A DNA stretch of 64,000 nt from positions 244,896 to 308,895 of the IMG/VR virus record IMGVR_UViG_3300012988_000016; one strand, 5' to 3'. Position 1 is the first letter of the stretch. Each line of letters opens with the position of its first letter. Both the position numbers and the translations under genes were made by a program. Under the pieces are notes generated by a model that was not told the DNA's origin, did not search any database, and saw only the letters and a program-made list of their open reading frames with translations. Of the stretch, positions 20,174 through 59,937 are shown in pieces.

Positions 20174-21349
20174 ATGCCAGCTACCGCCCTACTTAAATTT
20201 GCACAAGCTACGGTTGGAACTGGTTTGGCTGGACAGGCCTTTGCAGGGGTGCTGGGCCAACTAGTAACGGTCACCAATAGTGACAACACAGGGGTGGCGA
20301 GTTGGCAGATTGATCTGCTGTACGCCGCTCCTGGCAGTACCACTCCTGCCACCACCGCCTTGGCTTTCAGTGACAATGGTGCGACCCCTACCGTCACCTT
20401 CACGCCCAATGTGAGGCGTAGTTACCGTTTTCAACTCAAGGTGTGGAACGTCCCTAATAGGGTGGGGATTCCTGACATCGATATTCGTGTCTTCAGTGTT
20501 CGGGAATTGAACAACCTGTTCGTCCCTCCAGTCCAGATCTACCCACTACCTCTACCAGATCCTCAATCTAGTCTCGCAGGTGCCAAGCCAAATGAGATGA
20601 ACTTTGGAGGGCAATCAGGAGGTTGGGCAGGCGGTATTGATGCGGACGGTCTGCTGAATGACTTGATTGCCAGACATTTGAATGTAGCAGGCACTCCAGC
20701 TATCGGTAAGTTCATCGGGTACAACGGCACCACCCCCATATGGTCGATCCCTGGAGGGTTGGTGATCACTGGGTTCAACGTATCGGTGGGTTTGCTGGAA
20801 ACAGGTCAGATCATCAACAATCCGTCGTTCTCGGCCAGCTACAATACTGCTCCCGATAGTGTGACGTTGATCAACAACGCAGATGCTGAATCGAAAGATG
20901 TCAGCGGTACTCCCAACAGCTTTTCAAGCAGCCACAGTTTCCAAAAGAACGTCCCCAATCAATCGGTCACCTTCACCATCACTGCCACATTGTCGGGGTC
21001 AGCCAACGCTACCGCCAATGCGTCGATTACATGGGGTCAGAAGAACTTTTGGGGAGTCAGCAGTACGCCGGCCAACACTGAGGCTTTCATTGAAGGTTTG
21101 GCTAGCAATTCGTTGAGTACTTCTCGAAATGCTTCTTTCTCAGTCAACGCAACTGCTGGCACAAAGATCTACTACGCATGTCCCACTCGTTATGGAACTC
21201 CCAGTTTCTCAGTAGGTGGGTTCACAGGTGGATTCATCCAACGAGCTACAGGCATTAGTGTGACAAACGCCCAAGGATTCATCGAGAACTACGATCTCTA
21301 TGAGAGCGTATCAGTAGGTCTCGGACCAACAACTGTGAATGTATCATGA
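20174..21349 (+). CDS. putative virion structural (tail/fibre-associated) protein
   Basis: 391 aa, Thr/Ser/Gly/Asn-rich beta-strand pattern; ATGA-coupled to the giant fibre gene. Confidence 0.65.
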
Positions 21350-24300
21350 GTATCAATCAACCTGGTGACGTAACAGTTATTGCCCCAATCTCTGTACCTG
21401 GGGACGCTAATGCGGCAGTTCGTGCCGCATCTGTATTGGGCGGATTCGTAGCAGTAGTCGATACTACTGAACGAGATTTGATTCCCTCTAGTTCTCGAAA
21501 ACAAGGTATGTTGGTACATACCAATGATGGGACGTTCTATGTATTGGGGGCGGGTCTCACAAATGCCGATTGGGCGATCACCTCAATAGGTGGTGATTCC
21601 AGCTTCATGATCGTGGCTGACAACACAGCTCGCAACGCCATCCCTTCAGGGGCTAGGCGAGAGGGTATGTTGGTCTACAGCAAACTGACCAAAGTCTACT
21701 ACTCCCTAAACAGCGACCTGACGACCTGGACATTCTTTAGTGCCAGTCACTCCCTCGCACTGCAGACCGACTGGTACATCAACGCCTCAACTGGCAATGA
21801 CAACAATGATGGTAAGGTCGGCAACCCATTAGCTACAGTTGAAGAGCTGACTGCACGCCTAAATCCGAATGGGGCGAAGCTCGTTCTGTCACAGAATACC
21901 ACAATCCACATTGCGGCCGGTACCTACAATTTCTTCGACATCAATCTAGATATACCGATTGGTTCAAACTACATCTTCAAGGTCCTGTGTGATTACACGT
22001 CGTCTGCCCCCATCACCCTGAGTGGCGTCACCAACACGGTCGGTAGTGCTACTCCGACTCGTGGAAGTATACAGACAGCTGCTGGAACCTTTGTCGATAA
22101 GGCAAGAATCAGAAGCACCTCGGGTGCGGCGGCTGGAGCAATCACCTACGTGACTGGCCTGACCAGCTCAACCAACGCTTTCGTCAAAACCTGGTTTCAG
22201 GAGACGACCCCCAGCAGCTTCGGGGTCGTCAATGTGGCGAGCGGCACCACAGTGGTGATCGACACCCTACAGGTGACGATCAATCGACTGCGAATCCGAA
22301 CCACCAACAATCCGCTTAGCGGCGTTGTGAGTGTTTGGGACGCTATCCTGCCGGCCGGCGCCGAGTTCGTGAACGTTGCTGCCGGCAGCGCCGCCGTCTA
22401 CCTGTCGCAATGCCAGATCGGCGGTGGGACGTCGACGAACACCAAGCTCGTCGGCAATATGCAGGCCCGGAACAGCCGTCTTGTCGGGGCGAGCATCTCA
22501 CCGTTCGCGGTCTCCTTTCACGGCAACTCATCCCCCGTCTTGCAGGGGTGCGTCATCGAGTGCCCCATAACCTTCCTGACCGCGCTCGTCATCCCCGTCG
22601 GGAGCTGCTTCAACGGAGGGACTGTCACCGGAGGCGACCCGGCCGGCGTGTTTGGTGCCGGGAGCCTAAGCCTCTCTGACACCGAGTGGGTGAACGGCTC
22701 CGGAACCGCCGTGACCCTGAACTACGGGTGCCAGATGTATATCTTGGGCCAGCAGTTCGGCTTCGGGACCCCGTACGCCGTCGGATTCGCCCTGACCGCG
22801 CAGACCTCCGTGGCTGTGGCCTCGTCCACCTACCTAGGGATCCTCGCGACCCAGCAGATCACGATGGTCGGGCACAAGCACACGTACGCCCAGGTTCCGA
22901 TCTCGTACCCGAACTCAGAGTGCATATTCGCCCTCGCCTCCGACCCGCTAGGCATCCCCTACGGGTTCCCGGCACAGACGGCCACGGACTGGTACGTCAA
23001 CGCCTCTACCGGCAACGACTCCAACGATGGTCTGACCGCCGGCACTGCCCTCCGAACAACGGAGAGGTTGGCAGCGATCCTATGTCCTGGCGGCACCACC
23101 CTCACAGTTAGACAGAATACAATCGTTCACTTGGCGGCTGGTACCTATGATGCCTTGGAACTAAGTCTGACGATCCCCGTTGGTTCAAACTACACGTTCG
23201 AGGTGGTGTGTGCCTACACCTCATCGGCCCCCATCACCCTCTCAGGTGTGACCAACACGGTTGGAACTGTAACTCCTGTCCGAGGTAGCATCCAGACCGC
23301 TTCAGGCACGTTCGTCGACAAGGCTCGTATCCGTTCAACTTCAGGTGCCTCCGTTGGAGCCATCACCTACTGTACAGGTCTAACGAGCAGTACTAATGCC
23401 TTCGTCAAGAGCTGGTACCTAGAATCCTCTACATCTCAAGTCAACATTGTGAACGGCACGACCGTAACGGTTGACACCCTACAGGTGACGATCAATCGGG
23501 TCCAGATCCGCACTGTAGGGAATCCACTCAGCGGGGCGATCACCGTTAGAGATGCGATCCTACCGAACGGTATGGAATGCTTATTCTTGGGAGGCAGTTC
23601 TCAATTTGTCTTCTCTCAATGCCAGATCGGCGGGACACTCCCCAATGCCTGCCGAGTATCAGGCAACATACAGATGGCGAATTGCCGTTTCACCGGCACT
23701 CAAGTCTTGGGATTCGCTCAAGGAAGTTCTCCCGTTTTTGCAGGGTGTGTGCTTGAGATCAAAGCACTGATCTATAACAACGTCTCGGAATTTCAAGCCA
23801 ACTGCTTCAATGGAGGTAGTGTTGAATTGGGAGATCCGACTGCCGCTCTTCAAGCGAGTCTCATACTTACCGACAACGAATGGGTGAATGGCTCTGGAAC
23901 GGCTATCGCGGTATTCCCTGGTAGTTATCTGAGAATCACAGGTCAACAGTTCGGCTTCGGCACCAATTACGCGGTCGGCTACAACGTGACGGCAGGTGGT
24001 CATGTCGTCACCAATTCGACCGCTATACTGAGCATACCTGCTACTCAGCAGATCACGATGGCTGGGAAGAATCTCAACTACGTGGATGTGCCCAGGTCTT
24101 ATCCGAATGCGGATTGTGTTTTTGCTCTAACGAATGACCCTAATCCGATTCCTTTCGGAAACACTACCGCTTCTTCGCAAGCTGCCTGGTACATCAACGC
24201 TAGTACGGGCAATGATGCGAATGACGGCAAGACAAGCGGTACCGCTCTCGCTAGCCTCGACGAGCTCCGAAACCGTCTCAACCCCAATGGAGCCTGGTAT

Positions 24301-27300
24301 ATCCCCGCTCAAAGCACGACCGTGTTCATTGCGGCCGGTACCTACAATGCTCTTGAGCTCAGCGTCAGCATCCCCGTTGGCTCAAACTACGTCTTCGATG
24401 TGAAGGGGGACTTTACCTCCAGTAGTCCGATCACCCTGTCTAGTGTGACCAACACGGTTGGATCTGCCACTCCCACCCGAGGTGCCATTCAAACTGCCTC
24501 CGGTACTTTTATCGACAAAGCTCGTGTTAGAAGCACCTCGGGAGGCTCCACAGGAGCAATCAGCTATATCACTGGCCTGACAAGCTCAACTAACGCTTTC
24601 GTCAAGAAGTGGTTCAACGCTACCTCGTTCAGCGAAACGACGGTTGGTCTCAGTTCAACAGTGGTGATGGACACCTTACAGGTGACGATCAATCGTGTCC
24701 AGATCCGAACCAGCGGTCATCCACTTGGTGGGCAGATTCACGTATACGACACCATTTTGCCTTTCGGGGCAGAGATCGTCAATCAGGTAGGGGGCAGTGC
24801 CTCATTGGCACTAGTCGGATGCAAGATTGGCAATTCTGGCTCAGTAACGGCCCGTGTTTCTGGTAACGTTCAGCTGCAAAACTGCCAGATTACAGGCACT
24901 CAACCCGTGTCGATGTTCAGCGGCGTGGTGCCCGTATTTGCTGGATGTGTGATCGAGAATCAAGTGTTGATTTACTCGACAACACAGATCTATGTCGCCA
25001 ACTGTATGAACGGCGGTTCGATCTACGCCTCTGGTACTACAGCTGTTGTGCCGGCCAATCTATCGATCGCTGATTGTGAGTGGGTTAACGGAAATGGATC
25101 CACAACAGCCATCACGGTCGGACCTAGATGTGGGATTCAAATATTTGGTCAGCAATATGGGTTTGGGACCAACTATGCGGTTGGCTTCGCTCTGACGAGT
25201 GGGGCAACCGTCGTCACAGACTCTGTTACAAGTTTGGGTATTCTGGCCACTCAACAGATCACCATGACGGGCCACAATTTGAACTATTCAAATGTGCCTC
25301 GAAGCTACCCTAATGCCGATTGTGCTTTCGTATTGCTGAACGATCCTGCCGCAGTTGCGTTCACCTCAGCTCGTTTTGGCGCCACTTTCTACGTAGATCC
25401 GGCCTACACTGGATTCTCGAACGGCACTCAAGCCAACCCATATCCAAGCATCACCACCGCCATAGCGGCCGCTCCTTCGACTGGTGCGCTGATCTTTATG
25501 GCGCCGTATTCGACCACAGTTGAGAACGTCACGTTCCCAACAACTGGTGTTTGGGAGGTCCGGTCTGAGGCCGAGGTGGGGACTACCATCAACGGCAACA
25601 TCGTGTGTACGGGTGGTGCTGGTGCGGCCGTTACCCTGACGACTCTGATCGTTACTGGTACGGTGAGCGGTGATTTCACGTCGCCAACTGGTGGACGTTC
25701 TCTGATCCTGAACAACACAGATATCAATGGGGCTGTGAGCCTGACGTCCACTGCCGGCAACCGCTGGACCCTTATCCTAAACGGACTAGGCGGTTCACTG
25801 GCGGGTCTTAATGGTGCGTTGAAGTCAACGGCATCGGTCGTTGGCGCCATCCAGGCGTCCAACTACTACATGGTTGGCGCCGTGTCGTTCTCAGCAGCTT
25901 CGCAGCTAAATAACTGCCACCTGACTTCTGGCAGCATTGGTGTGGGTGCGAATGTTTTGATTGAGAACACTGTGTTCGACTCAGCTGTGACGTTCACGGG
26001 AGCAGGGGTTGTGACGATTGATGGTGAGAGCCACGCTTCCGCAAAGGCAGTTGGTGCCATCACACTAGCGGGTGGTGCGACACTTGTGATTCGAAACAGC
26101 GTCTCTCTTGTGGGTATCCAACAAGACGGGGCTCTTGATACGCAAGTACTTGCCTGGAACAACTCGCTCTCTAGATGGAACCCTTCCTCTGTTGTGGGAC
26201 CTGCTGGACCCACAGGACCCGTTGGTCCGACCGGACCTACAGGTCCCACTGGTGCGACTGGCGCCACTGGAGCAGGCACCACAGGTGCAACTGGCCCGAC
26301 GGGACCTGCTGGACCAACTGGACCTGCAGGTGCCACGGGTGCCACAGGAGCTACTGGGGCGACCGGCGCAACGGGGCCAATAGGTCCAACGGGGCCGACA
26401 GGGGCTACAGGTCCCATCGGACCCACAGGTGCAACGGGCCCCATAGGTGCCACAGGGGCAACGGGAGCTACAGGATCGACTGGTGCCACAGGGGCTACTG
26501 GTGCTACTGGACCAACGGGTGCCAGCGGAACTTCAACCGTAGCGGCTACGTCTCCTATCACGGTCAGTACAGTAGGGTCTACCTCAACCATCGGAATCAT
26601 TCATCTTTGGGAGTTCACGATCGGTAACGGCACAACTACATTCGGCGATTTCAATGGTGCGTCTGCCGTTCGAGATGCCGTCACCTATGCCAACACTGTG
26701 GTGGGCCCTCTTGGAACTCCGTGGCAGCTCAGCCTCTTGATGAAAGTCGCTAGCTGCGACATCAACAACGGGGCCGGCAGCACTCTCATCATACCTGCAG
26801 ACTGCACTCTGAAGATCCGAGGATCTGGCTACAACCTAACCAGCAACAATTCGAAGCTGAACATCAATGGTAATGGTGGCTTCGAAGTAATTGGATCACT
26901 GTTCTTGGAGAATGTGTTGCTCCAAGGATCTGGCAGCACCCCATTGGGGTTTGCTATCATGAATTCTACGGCCGCTGTTCTTGGGATGCGAGACTGCTAT
27001 GTGCAGAACAGCTACCTTGATTGGCGTCAATCCAAAGGTCTAAAGACCGTCATTGAACGGACTTCTTTCGAAGCTCAAAGTAGTGACGCTAACCCCCTGA
27101 TCAGCATCAGTGGTGGGAGTGGCGGATATTTGGGGCATCTCGTGTTCTCGGAATGCACTTTCCAAGGAGTTGTTGATCGTACGTTAACTGCTTTCGGCCC
27201 AAGCAGCAACTCCTCATGGGTTGATCTGACTTTCGTACGATGCACTCTACGTTGCGCGGGCAATAGTGTGGCGGTCTCCAACAGCGTAACCAACGCCAAT

Positions 27301-28686
27301 AGCGGAGTGCTGAATGTATTCCCAGGTGGTGGTTCGGTCCCCAGTCGAATCAACGTCAAGTATTTGGATTGCAACGTATGGTCTGACGCTATCGTGGGGG
27401 GTGGTGGAGCTGGTGGGGCGATCCTCATGTATCTGACTAGTTCTGGTACTGGAGGAGCCGCCACCACCATTGATCTGGAAATCAATGGTGGGCAATGGTT
27501 GGCAAGTCCCAGCATCTACAGCGGTATCAACACCCCTTTCTACATTGGACCCAGGACTTGGGCAACTTCCGTAGATAATAACGGCATACGTAGTGTGTTG
27601 ATCAATAACGTTAGGATGGGTTGGGCAGACATCACTGGAGTGTTCAACGGAACACTCCATTATGGGCTTCCTGCATCCGAGATCAGTTACGGTGGGGACT
27701 CTAGGGCGTGGGCTGCCTTCACGGTGTACGCCCATAACACTAGAGTATCAAGGATCACCCTAGGAGGTATGGTCCAAGACTCTGATAGGGCGGACTTCGC
27801 ATTCATCGGTATTGACCGTTGCGAAGTAGAGGATGTACAGGCAGAGGGCGATTGGCAAGCTACCGGCTTGGGTACGTATCCAAAAGGGCGGTTCATCCTA
27901 TACCCAACTGTCAACTACAAGACCAAAAATGTGGCCCGCTATTCAAAGATCGCATACGGTAACTTTGAGGCGGCAGCACAAGCCAGCACCAACGATGGTG
28001 GGGTTTTCTGCGAATGCACCTTTCCGGACTCTGGTGCCCACCCGCAAGGTTGGGTGTTGTCAGATTCTACCGCTATCCTTTCATCCAACTGCCCGATCGG
28101 TAACGGAGTGTTCGTTGGCAGCGACAACAACGTTGTCTGGAGAACAATCGAGCGTTGTACTCTGATAGGTAATCTGAATCTAGCGACAGATGGTGACGGG
28201 GTAGCCTGCTATTCGCTCACCACCACCATAAATTTGGTTGTGAGAGATTGCACCATCAGTTCTTGGATAGCATGCGGCGTTCTTGTATCGACCAACACTA
28301 CGTTCGGTGGTACTTGCGAAATCTCTAACAATCGCATCGACAACTGCAGTCTTCCAGGGATCTACGTTCTGGCAAGTGCTTGGAGCTACATCGGCCCCCG
28401 CATCCTAGGTAACAATGTCGAGCATTGTGACGAAGGGGACTATCCGCACCTACACAGCCAAATTCGTGTCGGGCACCCCTCTGTCGACAATACAGTTGCC
28501 ACTATCGTTGGCAACTCTTGCGACCTCGGTGGTGGGATTGAAGTCCTTTCCTTAGGCTACATGTACGTCGCTGGTATGGATATGTTCAACTACGACACCA
28601 ATGTACCAATCTTAATCTCAACAACACCCTTGAGCGGTACGAGGCTCCGTCAGAACTATGCCGTGTGGAGAAGCGGGCTACACTGA
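21346..28686 (+). CDS. giant tail fibre/adhesin-like protein with three tandem beta-helix-like modules, a collagen tract and a C-terminal beta-helix
   Basis: 2446 aa; WY(I/V)NASTGNDxNDG three times; YVDP...[11 protein letters not shown]; (Gxx)n; C-terminal ISNNRI/ILGNNV/IVGNS repeats. Confidence 0.8.
21763..25360 (+). repeat. three ~1.2-kb intragenic tandem repeats
   Basis: Units start near 21763, 22975 and 24178; shared SSxPITLSxVTNTVG...GTFxDKARxRSTSG...DTLQVTINR. Confidence 0.85.
26197..26532 (+). repeat. collagen-like GPT/GAT triplet repeat
   Basis: About 110 aa of Gly-X-Y with one short interruption. Confidence 0.9.
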
Positions 28687-56054: not shown

Positions 56055-57059
56055 ATGCATCACGAGAAATTGCTCGAAGCGTGGTTGGCTGGATACGGGG
56101 GAGCCACCCTCATAGCGTACAGACCGGTCGCCCAATCGTTCCTAACTCAGGTCCCTCTTGAGATGCCGGCCATCCAGGCATGGGCCGAATCGCTCACAGG
56201 AAGTCCCTCAACAAGAGCGAGGAAGGTCTCGACCATTGTCAGCCTATTGACCTTCGCCCACAAGCACAGATACGTTGAAGAGAACTTGGGACTGTCTTTG
56301 AACCGTCCCAAGCAGACACCCAAGAAAGTCGTCCCTGTCGACACAAGCCTGATCCAGGATCTGGTTGGCGCTGCCAACGGGGAGCGGGACCGCCTCTTGA
56401 TTCGAGTGCTCTATGAGACCGGCAAATCCCCAGAGGCCGTCACCAAGCTTCGGTTCAAGGACTTGGATCAGGTCTCTGACGGATTGAAAGCTAGCCTGCT
56501 TGAGTTCCAAAAGGACGCCAGCCCTGAGCGGCTTGTGTTCCTATCATTTCGAAACCAAAAGCTTTCTGCCAGAGATGCCAGACGTATGGTACAGCGTGCT
56601 GCAACGGAAGCCGGCTTGGATGAGTTGGGGACGGCCTGGCTTCGCAAGGCCCATCACTGGAAAGACCCGAAACCAGTCCGAGCTTGGAATATTCGACAGG
56701 CTGCCTCGGGGCCGTTCGGAATCATCTACGGTCTGAGGGACCCAAGAACCAACGATCTCTGCTACGTCGGTATGACCCGTCTAAAGCTCCAAGAGCGGCT
56801 GAGGTGTCATCTGTCGAAGGCCAACCTAAAGACCCGTAATCGGGCTTCTGGATGGCTTCGGGGCCTCCTTGCAGACGGGGTTCGCCCTGTGGCTGAAGTG
56901 TTGGCAGTCGCCAAGGATCGGGACGAGCTGCTCTACCTGGAACGCTATCACATCAGCCAAGCCCGCTCGGAGGGACATCCGCTGGTCAACAGTACGCACG
57001 TCTGGAGCCTGAGGAAGATTCAAAAGAGGCTCAGAGGCGACATGAGTCGCTGGGCTTGA
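56055..57059 (+). CDS. degenerate tyrosine recombinase fused to a GIY-YIG-like endonuclease domain
   Basis: Core-binding domain; RDRLLIRVLYETGKS; WLRKAH; then IIYGLRDP...YVGMT...R...H...E. Confidence 0.75.
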   Translation: MHHEKLLEAWLAGYGGATLIAYRPVAQSFLTQVPLEMPAIQAWAESLTGSPSTRARKVSTIVSLLTFAHKHRYVEENLGLSLNRPKQTPKKVVPVDTSLIQDLVGAANGERDRLLIRVLYETGKSPEAVTKLRFKDLDQVSDGLKASLLEFQKDASPERLVFLSFRNQKLSARDARRMVQRAATEAGLDELGTAWLRKAHHWKDPKPVRAWNIRQAASGPFGIIYGLRDPRTNDLCYVGMTRLKLQERLRCHLSKANLKTRNRASGWLRGLLADGVRPVAEVLAVAKDRDELLYLERYHISQARSEGHPLVNSTHVWSLRKIQKRLRGDMSRWA

Positions 57060-57307: not shown

Positions 57308-57507
57308 CCGTAGGCGAACTCAAGCTCTTCCTCGCCAACTCTGAACTCCCCGATTCGGCAGAGGTGGTGATCCCTGGCCGACACTCCCTCCACGTCTGTC
57401 AGGCGGCTGAGACCACCATCGGGGACATCAACCACTACGGGCAGACCAGCTGGAAGCCCAACGGTGGCGACCCCGCACTGATCCTTCAGGATTGTTCCAC
57501 GGGTTGA
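57304..57507 (+). CDS. small phage protein (MTVxEL type)
   Basis: MTVGELKLFL...LPDSAEVV. Confidence 0.65.
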   Translation: MTVGELKLFLANSELPDSAEVVIPGRHSLHVCQAAETTIGDINHYGQTSWKPNGGDPALILQDCSTG

Positions 57508-57509
57508 GC

Positions 57510-57755
57510 ATGAACTTCTTCGATGAAGCACAGCAAGAAGTAGCGGAAGCCGAGGAACGCCGCTCCAAAGAACGTACGAGGCAGGACATGACCAAGCAAG
57601 AACTGATCAAGCTCTTGAAGGAGCAGCTCAGGATCGAGGTACGGTCGGAGGATCGAAACAACTACCTCAGCGGGCGATGTCAGCGGGTCAGGGTCATGCT
57701 CTTCTTGGGGGATGAGCTGATAGCCGAAGATTCGGCCGATTTGGGGACGGGCTGA
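57510..57755 (+). CDS. hypothetical protein
   Basis: Start MNFFDE. Confidence 0.6.
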   Translation: MNFFDEAQQEVAEAEERRSKERTRQDMTKQELIKLLKEQLRIEVRSEDRNNYLSGRCQRVRVMLFLGDELIAEDSADLGTG

Positions 57756-57757
57756 CG

Positions 57758-58024
57758 ATGAACCGTGAAACCAGAGAAGAGGTGATTCGCCTGTTGTCCG
57801 AGATGACAGGGGAATCGGACTCGATCCAGATTCAGACGATGCGGATCCCCGCCTGTATGGTGCGACCAGGCGATCGGTGGCCCTGCTATCAGAAGCCCAC
57901 ACTTGTCGTAAAGACGGTGCTTAATTCAAACGAAACGATGAGGTTCACGTTCGAGGACGGCCGCACAAGCACCACCTGGGCTAGCGGGACATCGATTGAG
58001 GTGGTGCGGCTGACGGCTATCTAG
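57758..58024 (+). CDS. small beta-barrel protein
   Basis: Similar to 15867-16064. Confidence 0.6.
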   Translation: MNRETREEVIRLLSEMTGESDSIQIQTMRIPACMVRPGDRWPCYQKPTLVVKTVLNSNETMRFTFEDGRTSTTWASGTSIEVVRLTAI

Positions 58025-58097
58025 CTGCTTTCACAGCTCGTTTTGACCCGAACGAGCTGTAGGGCTGGTGTAAGTGAGGGGATGAAAGGAGGTTCTC

Positions 58098-58313
58098 ATG
58101 CAAGAAGGAGACCTCGTTACGTTGAAGACAGCGGACAGCCCCATCATGGTAATCGAAAGTTTCCAGACGGGTGAACGTATTGCAAAGTGTGTATGGTGGA
58201 ATCCTTGGAGTAAGGAGATCCGTCATGAACAAATATACATTGGGGGTCTAAAGGAGTATGTACCTCCAAAACCAGACAATGGTAGGACCCTAAAAGTTGG
58301 AGTAAAGCGTTAA
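58098..58313 (+). CDS. YodC/DUF2158-like protein
   Basis: GDLVTLK...PIMVI...CVWW; AAGGAGG RBS. Confidence 0.75.
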   Translation: MQEGDLVTLKTADSPIMVIESFQTGERIAKCVWWNPWSKEIRHEQIYIGGLKEYVPPKPDNGRTLKVGVKR

Positions 58314-58337
58314 CTCCCGCCCACCCCGGCCGTACTA
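58310..58337 (+). promoter_or_regulatory. class A motif driving the tRNA-like pair
   Basis: TTAACTC-N12-GCCGTACTA; no ATG at +1. Confidence 0.7.
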
Positions 58338-58373
58338 TCAATCAAGGGCAACGGAGTCATGACCCACAGCCCC

Positions 58374-58465
58374 CAGTCGAATAGTTGGCCGGTTGCCAGC
58401 ATCTGATCCAATAACTCAGAATCGGGCGAGACGTCGCCCCAGGGGTTCAACTCCCCCTCGACGGT
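58374..58465 (+). tRNA. atypical tRNA-like gene (8/4 fold, long variable arm, 9-nt anticodon loop; identity undetermined)
   Basis: D-stem GTTGGC/GCCAGC, anticodon stem TCTGA/TCAGA, V-arm GGGCGA/TCGCCC, T-arm GGGG-TTCAACT-CCCC, acceptor 6/8 paired. Confidence 0.6.
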
Positions 58466-58538
58466 TTGCGGCTAGTTCAACAGGAAGAGCGACCCTTGTT
58501 AAAAGGGAGAGAAGTGGGTTCGAGGCCCACGCCGTGAG
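58466..58538 (+). tRNA. atypical tRNA-like gene (anticodon loop GTTAA, Asn-like)
   Basis: Acceptor TTGCGGC/GCCGTGA, TA, D GTTC/GAGC, CCCTT-GTTAA-AAGGG, T GTGGG-TTCGAGG-CCCAC. Confidence 0.7.
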
Positions 58539-58541
58539 CAA

Positions 58542-58745
58542 ATGGCACAACTGACCGAAGAACGGCGAGCCTACTACGAGAAAGCGATCCTCGACTACGA
58601 ACAGTTCCTGGCCCGTCCCCATCCAGAGCACTTCTACAGCAAACCGATCAAGTTCCCCGCCAACTTCGACCCTAAGCGGACCAACCATACCCACATCCTC
58701 GCCCTGATCCAAGACGCCAAAGAACAGCTTGAACCAAATGGCTAA
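58542..58745 (+). CDS. hypothetical protein
   Basis: 67-aa ORF right after the tRNA-like pair. Confidence 0.55.
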   Translation: MAQLTEERRAYYEKAILDYEQFLARPHPEHFYSKPIKFPANFDPKRTNHTHILALIQDAKEQLEPNG

Positions 58746-58950
58746 GTGCCGCTTCTGCCATGCCCCATCTGGCCAGCCTCACGATCGGACCATCCCACAC
58801 GGCGATCCATTCAACCGGAACTTCGTTGGCGATGTGGCCCAATGCGGTTGCAGGTGGGAGCGACAACCAGGCTATGGAGACGTGCTGATCTTATGCCCGA
58901 TCCACAGTGAGATCAATCGAATTGAGTATCTCAATACTCAATCTAGCTAG
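58738..58950 (+). CDS. small Cys/His protein
   Basis: CRFC...CGC...CPIH. Confidence 0.55.
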   Translation: MAKCRFCHAPSGQPHDRTIPHGDPFNRNFVGDVAQCGCRWERQPGYGDVLILCPIHSEINRIEYLNTQSS

Positions 58951-58970
58951 TTTGGTGTAAGATTTGGATC

Positions 58971-59345
58971 ATGAAACGTAGCCCCGCCATCCTCCACATA
59001 GCTCAAGATCTACAGTGGACCCCTGAGGATGTCCTCACGCCCATCGAATCCGCCTACCAACGCCTCAAACTGGCGGGCCTCCACGTTCACCTATGTGACG
59101 ATCGACTGATCGGAGGCTCTCACTACGATGACTCGGATCATCGTATCCGTATGGTGCTGAACGGCTTCATGATCGCTCCCGAGGGAACGGGCTATCGGCT
59201 CAAGAGGGCATCCGACGGTCAGACGGACGGCATAGGGTGCCTGACGCTCGATCAAGCCATCAGGTTGGTGATCGATACGATCCAGCCTCAGCCGAATATT
59301 GAGGCCCCACCCAGACCCCCTCAAAAAGGCCCACAGCTCTATTAA
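58971..59345 (+). CDS. hypothetical protein
   Basis: Class B motif 11 nt upstream. Confidence 0.6.
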   Translation: MKRSPAILHIAQDLQWTPEDVLTPIESAYQRLKLAGLHVHLCDDRLIGGSHYDDSDHRIRMVLNGFMIAPEGTGYRLKRASDGQTDGIGCLTLDQAIRLVIDTIQPQPNIEAPPRPPQKGPQLY

Positions 59346-59369
59346 CTTTCCCCCACCTGATCCGTTATA
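59342..59369 (+). promoter_or_regulatory. class A motif driving a tRNA-like gene
   Basis: TTAACTT-N12-TCCGTTATA; no ATG at +1; CCTAGCTG/CAGCTAGG hairpin follows. Confidence 0.7.
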
Positions 59370-59437
59370 TAGATCAGAATGCATGGAGCGCCTAGCTGGC
59401 CCAAGAGGCAGCTAGGACCGAGTCAAGTCTTGGCAGC

Positions 59438-59509
59438 GATACTTTGGTGTACTGGTGCACACACCCGATAAGGGTGGAGAGTTGGGTTCGAATCCCAGCA
59501 AGTATCCCA
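59438..59509 (+). tRNA. atypical tRNA-like gene (anticodon loop GATAA, Ile-like)
   Basis: Acceptor GATACTT/AAGTATC then CCA; D GTGT/GCAC; CACCC-GATAA-GGGTG; T GTTGGG-TTCGAAT-CCCAGC. Confidence 0.75.
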
Positions 59510-59510
59510 C

Positions 59511-59714
59511 ATGAAAGAACAACTAGCCGACATCCGAGATGCCTGGCTGCTACTCATCATGATAGTGTGGTGGGTGGTGACGCTGGAGTTCCAACGCTGG
59601 GAGATTCGACGTCAGTACGCTGGTCTGACCAGGCAGCTTGAGCAGAGTCAACTGAGGCTTCAACAACTCAAGCGAGGGGTCGGGACAGTAGCGGTACGTT
59701 ACCGTGTAGGCTGA
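59511..59714 (+). CDS. small membrane protein
   Basis: TM segment plus coiled coil. Confidence 0.55.
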   Translation: MKEQLADIRDAWLLLIMIVWWVVTLEFQRWEIRRQYAGLTRQLEQSQLRLQQLKRGVGTVAVRYRVG

Positions 59715-59937
59715 ACAACTATCGGCGGCCGACTGGCCTGGCTCCCCATAGCGAAGCTACGGGCCGGCCCACCAGCCGCCGCTAAATGACCGTCTGGCCG
59801 AACCGATCGATAATCCGTTCGGGCTGTACAGATCTCCCAAAATGGCGTATCCAGTATGCGCCCCGCTCAAAACGGCAAATAGGTCAAATCCCCCTATCTA
59901 TCCAAATTTTTATCGACCGGCCATTTTTGGCTCGATC

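What the first reader, a model, noticed from the sequence alone, without database searches (positions are those of the whole stretch)
58374..58465. 8/4-fold tRNA-like RNA with 6-bp D-stem and long variable arm, abutting the next tRNA
Seen: 8-nt acceptor strands CAGTCGAA/CTCGACGG (two mismatches), TA linker, 6-bp D-stem, 9-nt anticodon loop TCCAATAAC, 6-bp V-arm, and 4-bp T-stem with TTCAACT loop. The next tRNA starts at the very next base, 58466. Known: 8/4 acceptor/T folds occur in allo-tRNAs and selC* tRNAs, and 6-bp D-stems in tRNA-Sec. There is no TCA anticodon, so identity is unknown. Standard scanners could miss it.
Basis: partly seen in the sequence, partly recalled or inferred. Interest (0 to 1): 0.65.

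Follow-up and report, generated by a model that had tools for sequence, protein, structure and literature searches.

The report
Phage-borne allo-tRNA fused to a tRNA
The 92-base stretch is a real but degenerate member of the rare 'allo-tRNA' family (8/4 cloverleaf, long variable arm), carried by a soil jumbo phage and joined without a spacer to a second odd tRNA; it adds a member to a known class, not a new class.

Summary
The next tRNA starts at 58466. One addition: the D loop is 5 nt (CGGUU). Default ARAGORN and Rfam gathering thresholds miss it. The Rfam tRNA-Sec model gives 26.5 bits, the second-best RNA hit in the 64-kb window.

Pattern scans found relatives in metagenomes and in one acidobacterial genome. 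They share the D arm, 6-nt anticodon-stem strands, a long variable arm, a 4-bp T stem and fully paired 8-bp acceptors that covary. These are 8/4 allo-tRNAs with anticodon UAU (loop CUUAUAA), the group described by Mukai et al. (2017).

By homology the candidate's '9-nt loop' is a U·C mismatch closing a 7-nt loop, CCAAUAA. That gives anticodon AAU with C33, not the usual U33.

One relative lies in a phage-like contig 2 nt upstream of a tRNA-Thr, so tight tandem packing recurs. The host record is a 309-kb soil phage that encodes a CCA-adding-type enzyme and an RNA ligase.

Expression, charging and decoding are untested. I rate it a new member of a known kind, probably a poor decoder.

The parts
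58374..58381 (+). 5' acceptor strand CAGUCGAA (8 nt)
   Evidence: Pairs with 58457-58464. Six of 8 pairs form.
58382..58383 (+). UA linker (U8, A9 equivalents)
58384..58400 (+). D arm: 6-bp stem GUUGGC/GCCAGC with 5-nt loop CGGUU
   Evidence: The core GGCCGGUUGCC is shared with relatives L070, L143, L048 and L183.
58402..58420 (+). Anticodon arm: 5-bp stem UCUGA/UCAGA, a U58407 x C58415 mismatch at the sixth-pair position, and 7-nt loop CCAAUAA (58408-58414). Anticodon position AAU is 58410-58412 and C33 is 58409.
   Evidence: The register is set by homology to the relatives' 6-bp stems and CUUAUAA loops.
58421..58441 (+). Long variable arm: 6-bp stem GGGCGA/UCGCCC (58424-29 / 58434-39) with loop GACG
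58442..58456 (+). T arm: 4-bp stem GGGG/CCCC with loop UUCAACU (consensus T54 T55 C56 R57 A58)
58457..58465 (+). 3' acceptor strand CUCGACGG plus discriminator U58465. No CCA is encoded.
58466..58538 (+). Abutting irregular tRNA (tRNA2). It has G3.U70. The anticodon is UUA in the Infernal register or UAA in ARAGORN's register.
59438..59507 (+). Third irregular tRNA-like gene of the same region. It may form a 6-bp D stem with loop UGGU. It carries no strain differences although both flanks do.

Best explanation
This is a diverged gene of the 8/4 allo-tRNA family (UAU group) carried by a soil jumbo phage.

Shown:
- the cloverleaf;
- its homology to bona fide 8/4 allo-tRNAs;
- its position, with no spacer, in front of a second tRNA;
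- a CCA-adding-type enzyme gene elsewhere in the phage genome.

Inferred mechanism:
- The two genes are transcribed as one dimeric precursor.
- A single RNase P cut at 58465|58466 makes the 5' end of tRNA2 and leaves the allo-tRNA ending on its discriminator U.
- CCA is then added after transcription, because none is encoded.

Likely functional state:
- With a long variable arm and U73 it would be a SerRS substrate, if it is charged at all. It would then present AAU, which reads the Ile codon AUU.
- It has two acceptor mismatches, a U x C closing pair and C33 in place of the near-universal U33. The allo-tRNA(UAU) variants tested in E. coli were inactive.
- I therefore think it is most likely a stable tRNA-shaped RNA that decodes poorly or not at all. 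It may persist as part of the dimer, or serve as a decoy or regulator, and is unlikely to be a routine elongator tRNA.
For: Fold and statistics:
- the sequence folds as the described cloverleaf (z -2.74).
- tRNA-Sec model 26.5 bits, second-best RNA hit in the 64-kb window, next to the tRNA hit.
- a model built only from relatives scores it 52.4 bits (E 4e-10), the only hit in 309 kb.

Relatives:
- L070 (= L084 = L105), L143, L048 and L158/L183 (named Ca. Sulfopaludibacter in its record) share the D arm, 6-nt anticodon-stem strands, a long variable arm and a 4-bp T stem.
- L070 and L143 were selected only on the D arm and T loop. The 21-nt anticodon region nevertheless matches L070 at 14 of 21 positions, counted by eye from the and 52 sequences. 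One pair changes C-G to U-A, a compensatory change.
- in the relatives all 8 acceptor pairs form, except one U x U in L143. By my count 18 of 24 stem positions change on both sides while staying paired, including the eighth acceptor pair (C-G versus G-C).
- the relatives score 32.6-41.1 bits on tRNA-Sec, the signature described in PMC5389517.

Tandem arrangement and phage context:
- L070 lies in a phage-like contig 2 nt upstream of a canonical tRNA-Thr and encodes A73 plus CCA.
- the phage encodes a PolyA_pol/CCA-transferase-like protein next to an ATP RNA ligase.
- the sequence is identical in four soil metagenome runs from four studies and in three metagenome contigs, one of them the source contig, so it is not an assembly error.
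Against: - No homolog of the candidate itself with informative divergence was found. The strain variants are identical over 57500-58614, and related megaphage fragments lack the locus. Covariation therefore supports the family fold, not this copy.
- The seeds for model R2 were chosen with a pattern taken from the candidate, which inflates its 52.4 bits. By my rough estimate about half the score comes from the forced positions.
- The candidate has mismatches that the relatives lack: A2xG71, A8xC65 and U x C. Default ARAGORN rejects it but calls the four UAU-type relatives. The cloverleaf is lost in the minimum-energy fold of a 221-nt context.
- No RNA run holds the locus, and no promoter or terminator signal was found. 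Transcription, RNase P processing, CCA addition and charging are all inferred.
Confidence: 0.55

Rival explanations
1. It is a fully active missense tRNA. SerRS charges it through the long variable arm and U73. It then reads the Ile codon AUU (or AUU/AUC/AUA if A34 is deaminated). The phage uses it, perhaps together with tRNA2 (G3.U70, anticodon UUA or UAA), to recode or corrupt translation during infection.
For: [quoted passage not shown]
- The candidate keeps a perfect T loop, a perfect 6-bp variable-arm stem and U73.
- tRNA2 carries the AlaRS identity pair G3.U70.
- The phage encodes a CCA-adding-type enzyme.
Against: - C33, unmodified A34, two acceptor mismatches including 2-71, and a U x C closing pair.
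- All six allo-tRNA(UAU) variants tested in E. coli were inactive (PMC5389517).
- The phage's own genes use ATT and ATC heavily, 14 and 34 per 1000 codons, so Ser insertion there would damage phage proteins too.
- There is no sign of recoding in the genome.
Confidence: 0.2
2. It is a dead relic: an allo-tRNA(UAU) gene acquired from a host or another phage that is now decaying. It survives only because it sits in the leader of tRNA2.
For: - It differs from the family at five functionally sensitive places: pairs 2-71 and 8-65, the closing pair, position 33 and position 34.
- Default ARAGORN calls the four UAU-type relatives but not the candidate.
- PMC5389517 describes allo-tRNA(UAU) pseudogenes with disrupted stems.
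Against: Twenty-seven of 30 stem pairs and every T-loop consensus base are intact, and the boundary with tRNA2 is exact. Random decay would not spare these. This rival cannot be told apart from the best explanation without RNA data.
Confidence: 0.2
3. It is a tRNA-Sec or a selC*-type tRNA-Cys.
For: Its best Rfam hit is tRNA-Sec (26.5 bits). It has a 6-bp D stem, a long variable arm and U73.
Against: - The score is far below the gathering score of 47.
- There is no UCA or GCA in the anticodon position.
- The acceptor branch has 12 layers (8/4), not 13.
- The relatives carry UAU.
Confidence: 0.01
4. It is a chance cloverleaf in an intergenic spacer, or a partial tRNA copy marking an integration site for the integrase-like gene at 56055-57059.
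For: - Relaxed ARAGORN makes 85 calls in 309 kb.
- An ORF with weak integrase and GIY-YIG matches lies 1.3 kb upstream.
Against: - The covariance-model statistics and the homologs argue against chance.
- It is a full-length tRNA shape, not a 3' fragment.
- No identical host tRNA was found in the genome scan.
Confidence: 0.04

Closest known systems
(8/4) allo-tRNA, UAU group (Mukai et al. 2017, PMC5389517). Examples found here: L070, L143, L048 and L183 (record named Ca. Sulfopaludibacter).
   Same: - 8-nt acceptor strands plus a 4-bp T stem.
- Long D stem with a small loop (core GGC-CGGUU-GCC).
- 6-nt anticodon-stem strands and a long variable arm.
- Discriminator of the G/U type.
- Sub-threshold hit to the tRNA-Sec model.
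- Stem-destabilising mismatches, as reported for this group.
- Soil origin.
   Different: - The anticodon loop is CCAAUAA, not CUUAUAA (C33, A34), so the anticodon position reads AAU, not UAU.
- The sixth anticodon-stem pair is U x C.
- Two acceptor mismatches.
- A 2-nt UA linker and a full 6-bp D stem; the GGAAGGUG-type relatives have a 1-nt linker.
- A longer variable arm with a perfect stem.
- It is carried by a jumbo phage.
Polycistrons of allo-tRNA-like and other irregular tRNAs in soil metatranscriptomes (PMC5389517, Fig. 4)
   Same: An allo-tRNA-like gene directly joined to another irregular tRNA whose anticodon and identity elements suggest a missense or nonsense suppressor. Here that is G3.U70 with anticodon UUA or UAA.
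   Different: - Their sequences are not held here, since the paper's supplement is unavailable, so identity with those groups was not tested.
- They were attributed to Acidobacteria and toxin-antitoxin loci. This copy is in a phage, and no toxin-antitoxin domain was detected nearby.
Phage (8/4) tRNA-Ser and tRNA-His in tRNA clusters (PMC5389517)
   Same: A phage-encoded 8/4 tRNA lying among other tRNA genes.
   Different: Those carry cognate Ser or His anticodons and regular stems. This one has a non-Ser anticodon and mismatches.
Bacterial tRNA-Sec (Rfam RF01852)
   Same: 6-bp D stem with a small loop, an extended acceptor and a long variable arm.
   Different: - No UCA anticodon.
- An 8/4 (12-layer) branch, not 8/5 (13-layer).
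- 26.5 bits against a gathering score of 47.
Dimeric tRNA precursors of phage T4 (recalled from the literature, not tested here)
   Same: Two tRNAs made as one transcript and separated by RNase P, with CCA added afterwards where it is not encoded.
   Different: The T4 partners are regular elongator tRNAs. Here there is no spacer and both partners are irregular.

Membership tests
allo-tRNA (8/4) | 12-layer acceptor branch split as an 8-bp acceptor plus a 4-bp T stem | tested here: inconclusive
   The T stem has 4 of 4 pairs. The acceptor has 6 of 8; the eighth layer is A x C, so a 7/5 reading with A x C in the T stem fits the sequence equally well. By alignment to relatives in which the eighth pair is C-G or G-C, the 8/4 register is favoured.
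allo-tRNA (8/4) | Long D stem with a tetraloop-like small loop, as in tRNA-Sec | tested here: met
   6-bp stem with 5-nt loop CGGUU. Four relatives have the same loop.
allo-tRNA (8/4) | Long variable arm | tested here: met
   21 nt with a 6-bp stem.
allo-tRNA (8/4) | Extended (6-bp) anticodon stem | tested here: inconclusive
   Five pairs plus U x C at the sixth position. The relatives have U-A or U.G there.
allo-tRNA (8/4) | Discriminator G73 or U73 | tested here: met
   U at 58465. The criterion is taken from PMC5389517.
allo-tRNA (8/4) | Sequence and structure homology to accepted members | tested here: met
   Model R2, built from L070, L158 and L048 only, gives 52.4 bits and E 4e-10, the single hit in 309 kb. 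The score is inflated because the seeds were picked by a pattern taken from the candidate. The tRNA-Sec model gives a similar sub-threshold hit for the candidate and the relatives.
allo-tRNA (8/4) | Activity as a tRNA (processing, charging, decoding) | not testable with these tools
   No RNA run holds the locus.
tRNA-Sec (RF01852) | UCA anticodon, 13-bp acceptor branch, score at or above the gathering score of 47 bits | tested here: not met
   No UCA in the loop, 12 layers, 26.5 bits.
selC* tRNA-Cys | U73 together with a GCA or UCA anticodon | tested here: not met
   U73 is present, but the loop CCAAUAA holds neither GCA nor UCA.
canonical tRNA (RF00005) | Score at or above the gathering score of 29 bits; U33; 7/5 branch | tested here: not met
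   The candidate shows no RF00005 hit in the Rfam scans; within the tRNA clan only the tRNA-Sec model matches it. Position 33 is C.

The most novel reading that the evidence does not exclude
The phage carries a small set of deliberately irregular adaptors:
- an allo-tRNA with AAU;
- a G3.U70 tRNA with anticodon UUA or UAA;
- a third tRNA-like gene.

All three lack U33 in the canonical register. In this reading they are matured by the phage's own CCA-adding enzyme and RNA ligase. They would act either as missense or nonsense suppressors that reshape translation during infection, or as nuclease-insensitive substitutes or decoys against host anticodon nucleases.
Probability: 0.12. Interest if true: 0.8.

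Novelty: new member of a known kind. Interest (0 to 1): 0.45.

Why it matters
Allo-tRNAs are rare, and their natural role is unknown. The abundant UAU group has not been shown to work in translation.

This locus gives a defined genetic setting for testing one:
- a jumbo-phage copy joined base-to-base to a second irregular tRNA that carries an Ala identity pair;
- a genome that also encodes a CCA-adding-type enzyme and an RNA ligase.

The open question is whether such RNAs are adaptors, suppressors, decoys or relics.

For annotation, it shows that default tRNA finders miss this class. A sub-threshold tRNA-Sec hit next to a tRNA gene deserves a second look.

Tried and rejected
Searches that found nothing useful:
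- BLAST of 4.5 kb around the locus against the phage records found no match.
- Exact and two-anchor DNA patterns in viral contigs found nothing, or only coding sequence and a canonical tRNA-Cys.
- Flanking small proteins: P0002 has no homolog at all. P0001 gave one weak, unrelated locus.
- Five related megaphage records, found through the putative capsid protein, hold no copy by BLAST; a covariance-model search of four of them (G001-G004) also found none. They are fragments, so this does not show absence.
- A sample of 151 Acidobacteriota genomes gave mostly canonical tRNA-Leu and tRNA-Ser. Only G006 had this D-arm type, and G072 had an 8/4 tRNA-Ser.
- The Terriglobia and other genome pattern hits were a conserved coding sequence, not tRNAs.

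Uninformative results:
- The strain variants have no differences over 57500-58614.
- No RNA run holds the locus.
- The promoter and terminator scan was empty.
- Neighbouring ORFs have no Pfam domains, including toxin-antitoxin ones.
- The MAFFT alignment of the six sequences (A5) was not in structural register. I therefore did not run the count of structure pairs on it and used the verified manual segment table instead.

Ideas rejected:
- Stop-codon recoding. Standard-code frames already cover 95% of the genome, and TAA is used as a stop.
- tRNA-Sec or selC* identity, a chance fold, and an attachment-site fragment.

Full report
**Setting**

The window is the last 64 kb of a 308,895-bp IMG/VR virus record. 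CheckV rates the record 65% complete.
- Large ORFs with phage-family hits (head protease, helicases, DnaB) mark it as a jumbo phage.
- The standard genetic code fits. Stop-to-stop frames of at least 100 aa cover 95% of the genome, and TAA, TAG and TGA all serve as stops.
- Soil metagenome runs from four studies hold the locus.

**The observation**

Folded alone, its minimum-energy structure is the proposed cloverleaf: -36.1 kcal/mol, z = -2.74.

The parts are:
- Acceptor CAGUCGAA/CUCGACGG with A2xG71 and A8xC65 mismatched.
- UA linker.
- Anticodon stem UCUGA/UCAGA.
- Variable-arm stem GGGCGA/UCGCCC.
- T stem GGGG/CCCC with a consensus T loop, UUCAACU.
- Discriminator U58465.

The next base, 58466, is position 1 of a tRNA called by both ARAGORN and Rfam (29.3 bits against a threshold of 29).

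**Is it more than chance?**
- Default ARAGORN and the Rfam gathering thresholds do not report it.
- With permissive thresholds, the Rfam tRNA-Sec model aligns end to end over 58373-58465 at 26.5 bits.
- In a scan of the whole 64-kb window against all 4227 families this is the second-best hit overall (E 0.55). That is about 1.3e-4 for the single family, by my division. It lies directly beside the best hit.
- Relaxed ARAGORN calls it tRNA-Ile(aat). A similar relaxation gives 85 calls in 309 kb, so I give that no weight.

**Relatives**
- Searches by similarity, by flanking proteins and in related megaphage fragments found nothing.
- A two-anchor pattern, D-arm core plus T loop, was run over metagenome contigs. 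A three-anchor pattern was run over one genome per species. Hits were filtered with a covariance model of the candidate.
- Besides three identical copies of the phage locus, one of them its own source contig, this recovered four distinct relatives: L070 (= L084 = L105), L143, L048, and L158/L183. The last comes from a genome whose record names Ca. Sulfopaludibacter (Acidobacteriota).
- A model built from three of them found an 8/4 tRNA-Ser(UGA), L192, in another acidobacterial genome without any pattern constraint.
- Default ARAGORN calls the four relatives tRNA-Ile(tat).
- The relatives score 32.6-41.1 bits on tRNA-Sec. That is the signature by which Mukai et al. found allo-tRNAs among tRNA-Sec false positives (PMC5389517).

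**Structural comparison** (segments checked against the stored sequences)
- In the 8/4 register every relative forms all eight acceptor pairs, apart from one U x U in L143.
- L070 then continues with A73 and an encoded CCA, which fixes its register.
- By my count of the table, 18 of 24 stem positions change on both sides while staying paired.
- The eighth acceptor pair is one of these: C-G in L070 and L143, G-C in L048, L183 and L192.
- A 7/5 reading is impossible for L070 (G x G) and poor for L183 (A x C). The family fold is therefore 8/4.
- The candidate fits the same layout with three mismatches: 2-71, 8-65 and the sixth anticodon-stem pair.
- Its own eighth layer is A x C, so its 8/4 assignment rests on homology.

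**The anticodon loop**
- The relatives have a sixth anticodon-stem pair (U-A or U.G) closing the 7-nt loop CUUAUAA, which gives anticodon UAU.
- The candidate has U x C closing CCAAUAA.
- The anticodon position reads AAU, and position 33 is C, not U.
- L070 was selected only on its D arm and T loop. Its 21-nt anticodon region still matches the candidate at 14 of 21 positions with no gap, including a C-G to U-A compensatory change. This supports common descent from the UAU group.
- The model built without the candidate scores it 52.4 bits (E 4e-10), the only hit in the phage genome. I estimate that roughly half of that score comes from positions forced by the search pattern.

**Context and mechanism**
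- L070 lies in a contig whose ORFs hit phage protein families.
- Its allo-tRNA is followed after 2 nt by a canonical tRNA-Thr scoring 70 bits. Tight 5' placement in a tRNA tandem therefore recurs.
- In the window none of the three tRNA-like genes encodes CCA.
- Outside the window, the phage encodes a PolyA_pol/CCA-transferase-like protein at G000:140733-141884. Its NCBIfam hits are all far below their cut-offs.
- Next to it lies an ATP RNA ligase at G000:142152-143219 (TIGR02306, 176.5 bits, above its cut-off).
- From this I infer a dimeric transcript. One RNase P cut at 58465|58466 would mature both neighbours, followed by CCA addition. None of these steps was observed.
- No RNA run holds the locus, and no promoter or terminator signal was found.

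**Function**
- PMC5389517 states that a long variable arm with G73 or U73 suggests SerRS charging.
- The same paper reports that six allo-tRNA(UAU) variants were inactive in E. coli, and that the group carries stem-destabilising mutations.
- The candidate adds C33, A34 and a mismatch at pair 2-71.
- ATT and ATC are common codons in the phage's own genes. An efficient Ser-inserting reader of these codons would harm the phage itself.
- I therefore favour a matured but poorly decoding or non-decoding tRNA-shaped RNA.
- Rivals: an active missense tRNA (0.2) and a dead relic (0.2).
- The anticodon-nuclease evasion idea for phage tRNAs (PMC10264068), together with the ligase and CCA-enzyme pair, makes a decoy or resistance role conceivable. 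It is untested.

**Limits**
- Covariation supports the family fold, not this copy.
- The strain variants are identical across 57500-58614.
- In a 221-nt context the candidate's acceptor and D stems are not in the minimum-energy fold, while tRNA2's cloverleaf is.
- The supplement of PMC5389517 is not held, so I could not compare with the published polycistron sequences.

**Verdict**

This is a new, degenerate, phage-borne member of the known allo-tRNA class.

Noticed in passing
window 58466-58538: The abutting tRNA carries G3.U70 (58468.58535), the main AlaRS identity pair. Its anticodon is UUA (which reads the UAA stop) in the Infernal/canonical register, with G33. In ARAGORN's register it is UAA (Leu UUA). 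It may be an Ala-inserting nonsense or missense suppressor. The genome shows no TAA recoding.
   Followed up: partly
window 59438-59507: A third irregular tRNA-like gene. ARAGORN calls it Tyr(ata), and the tRNA-Sec model gives 24.4 bits. It may form a 6-bp D stem with loop UGGU, and it has an extra C between the T stem and the acceptor. Strain variants show no change inside it but differ at 59436, 59508 and 59510 and densely downstream. This hints at purifying selection.
   Followed up: partly
window 58409, 58498, 59467: All three tRNA-like genes lack the near-universal U33 in the canonical loop register; they have C, G and G respectively.
   Followed up: no
outside the window: G000:C1:140733-141884 and 142152-143219 (L221/L222): Adjacent genes for a PolyA_pol/CCA-adding-type nucleotidyltransferase and an ATP-dependent RNA ligase (TIGR02306, 176.5 bits). 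Together they look like a tRNA maturation or repair module. No clear polynucleotide kinase lies beside them.
   Followed up: partly
window 56055-57059: A 334-aa ORF with a GIY-YIG domain and a weak, below-cut-off phage-integrase match, 1.3 kb upstream of the tRNA pair.
   Followed up: no
L192 (acidobacterial genome G072): An array of at least 10 tRNA genes headed by an 8/4 tRNA-Ser(UGA). The array also holds a 92-nt long-variable-arm tRNA with anticodon UAU. L203 (G023) has a 7/5 long-arm tRNA(UAU) in three copies.
   Followed up: no
L152, L168, L176, L180 (Planctomycetaceae genomes): Clusters of irregular tRNAs with a compact D arm (GGGCC-GGUU-GCCC), 7-bp anticodon stems and a GAU anticodon, several per locus.
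   Followed up: no
window 57500-59936: Strain differences are very uneven: none over 57500-58614, then 33 over 58615-59936. This suggests a mosaic or recombinant history for the region.
   Followed up: no
window 21346-28686: A single 2446-aa ORF, which I did not examine.
   Followed up: no
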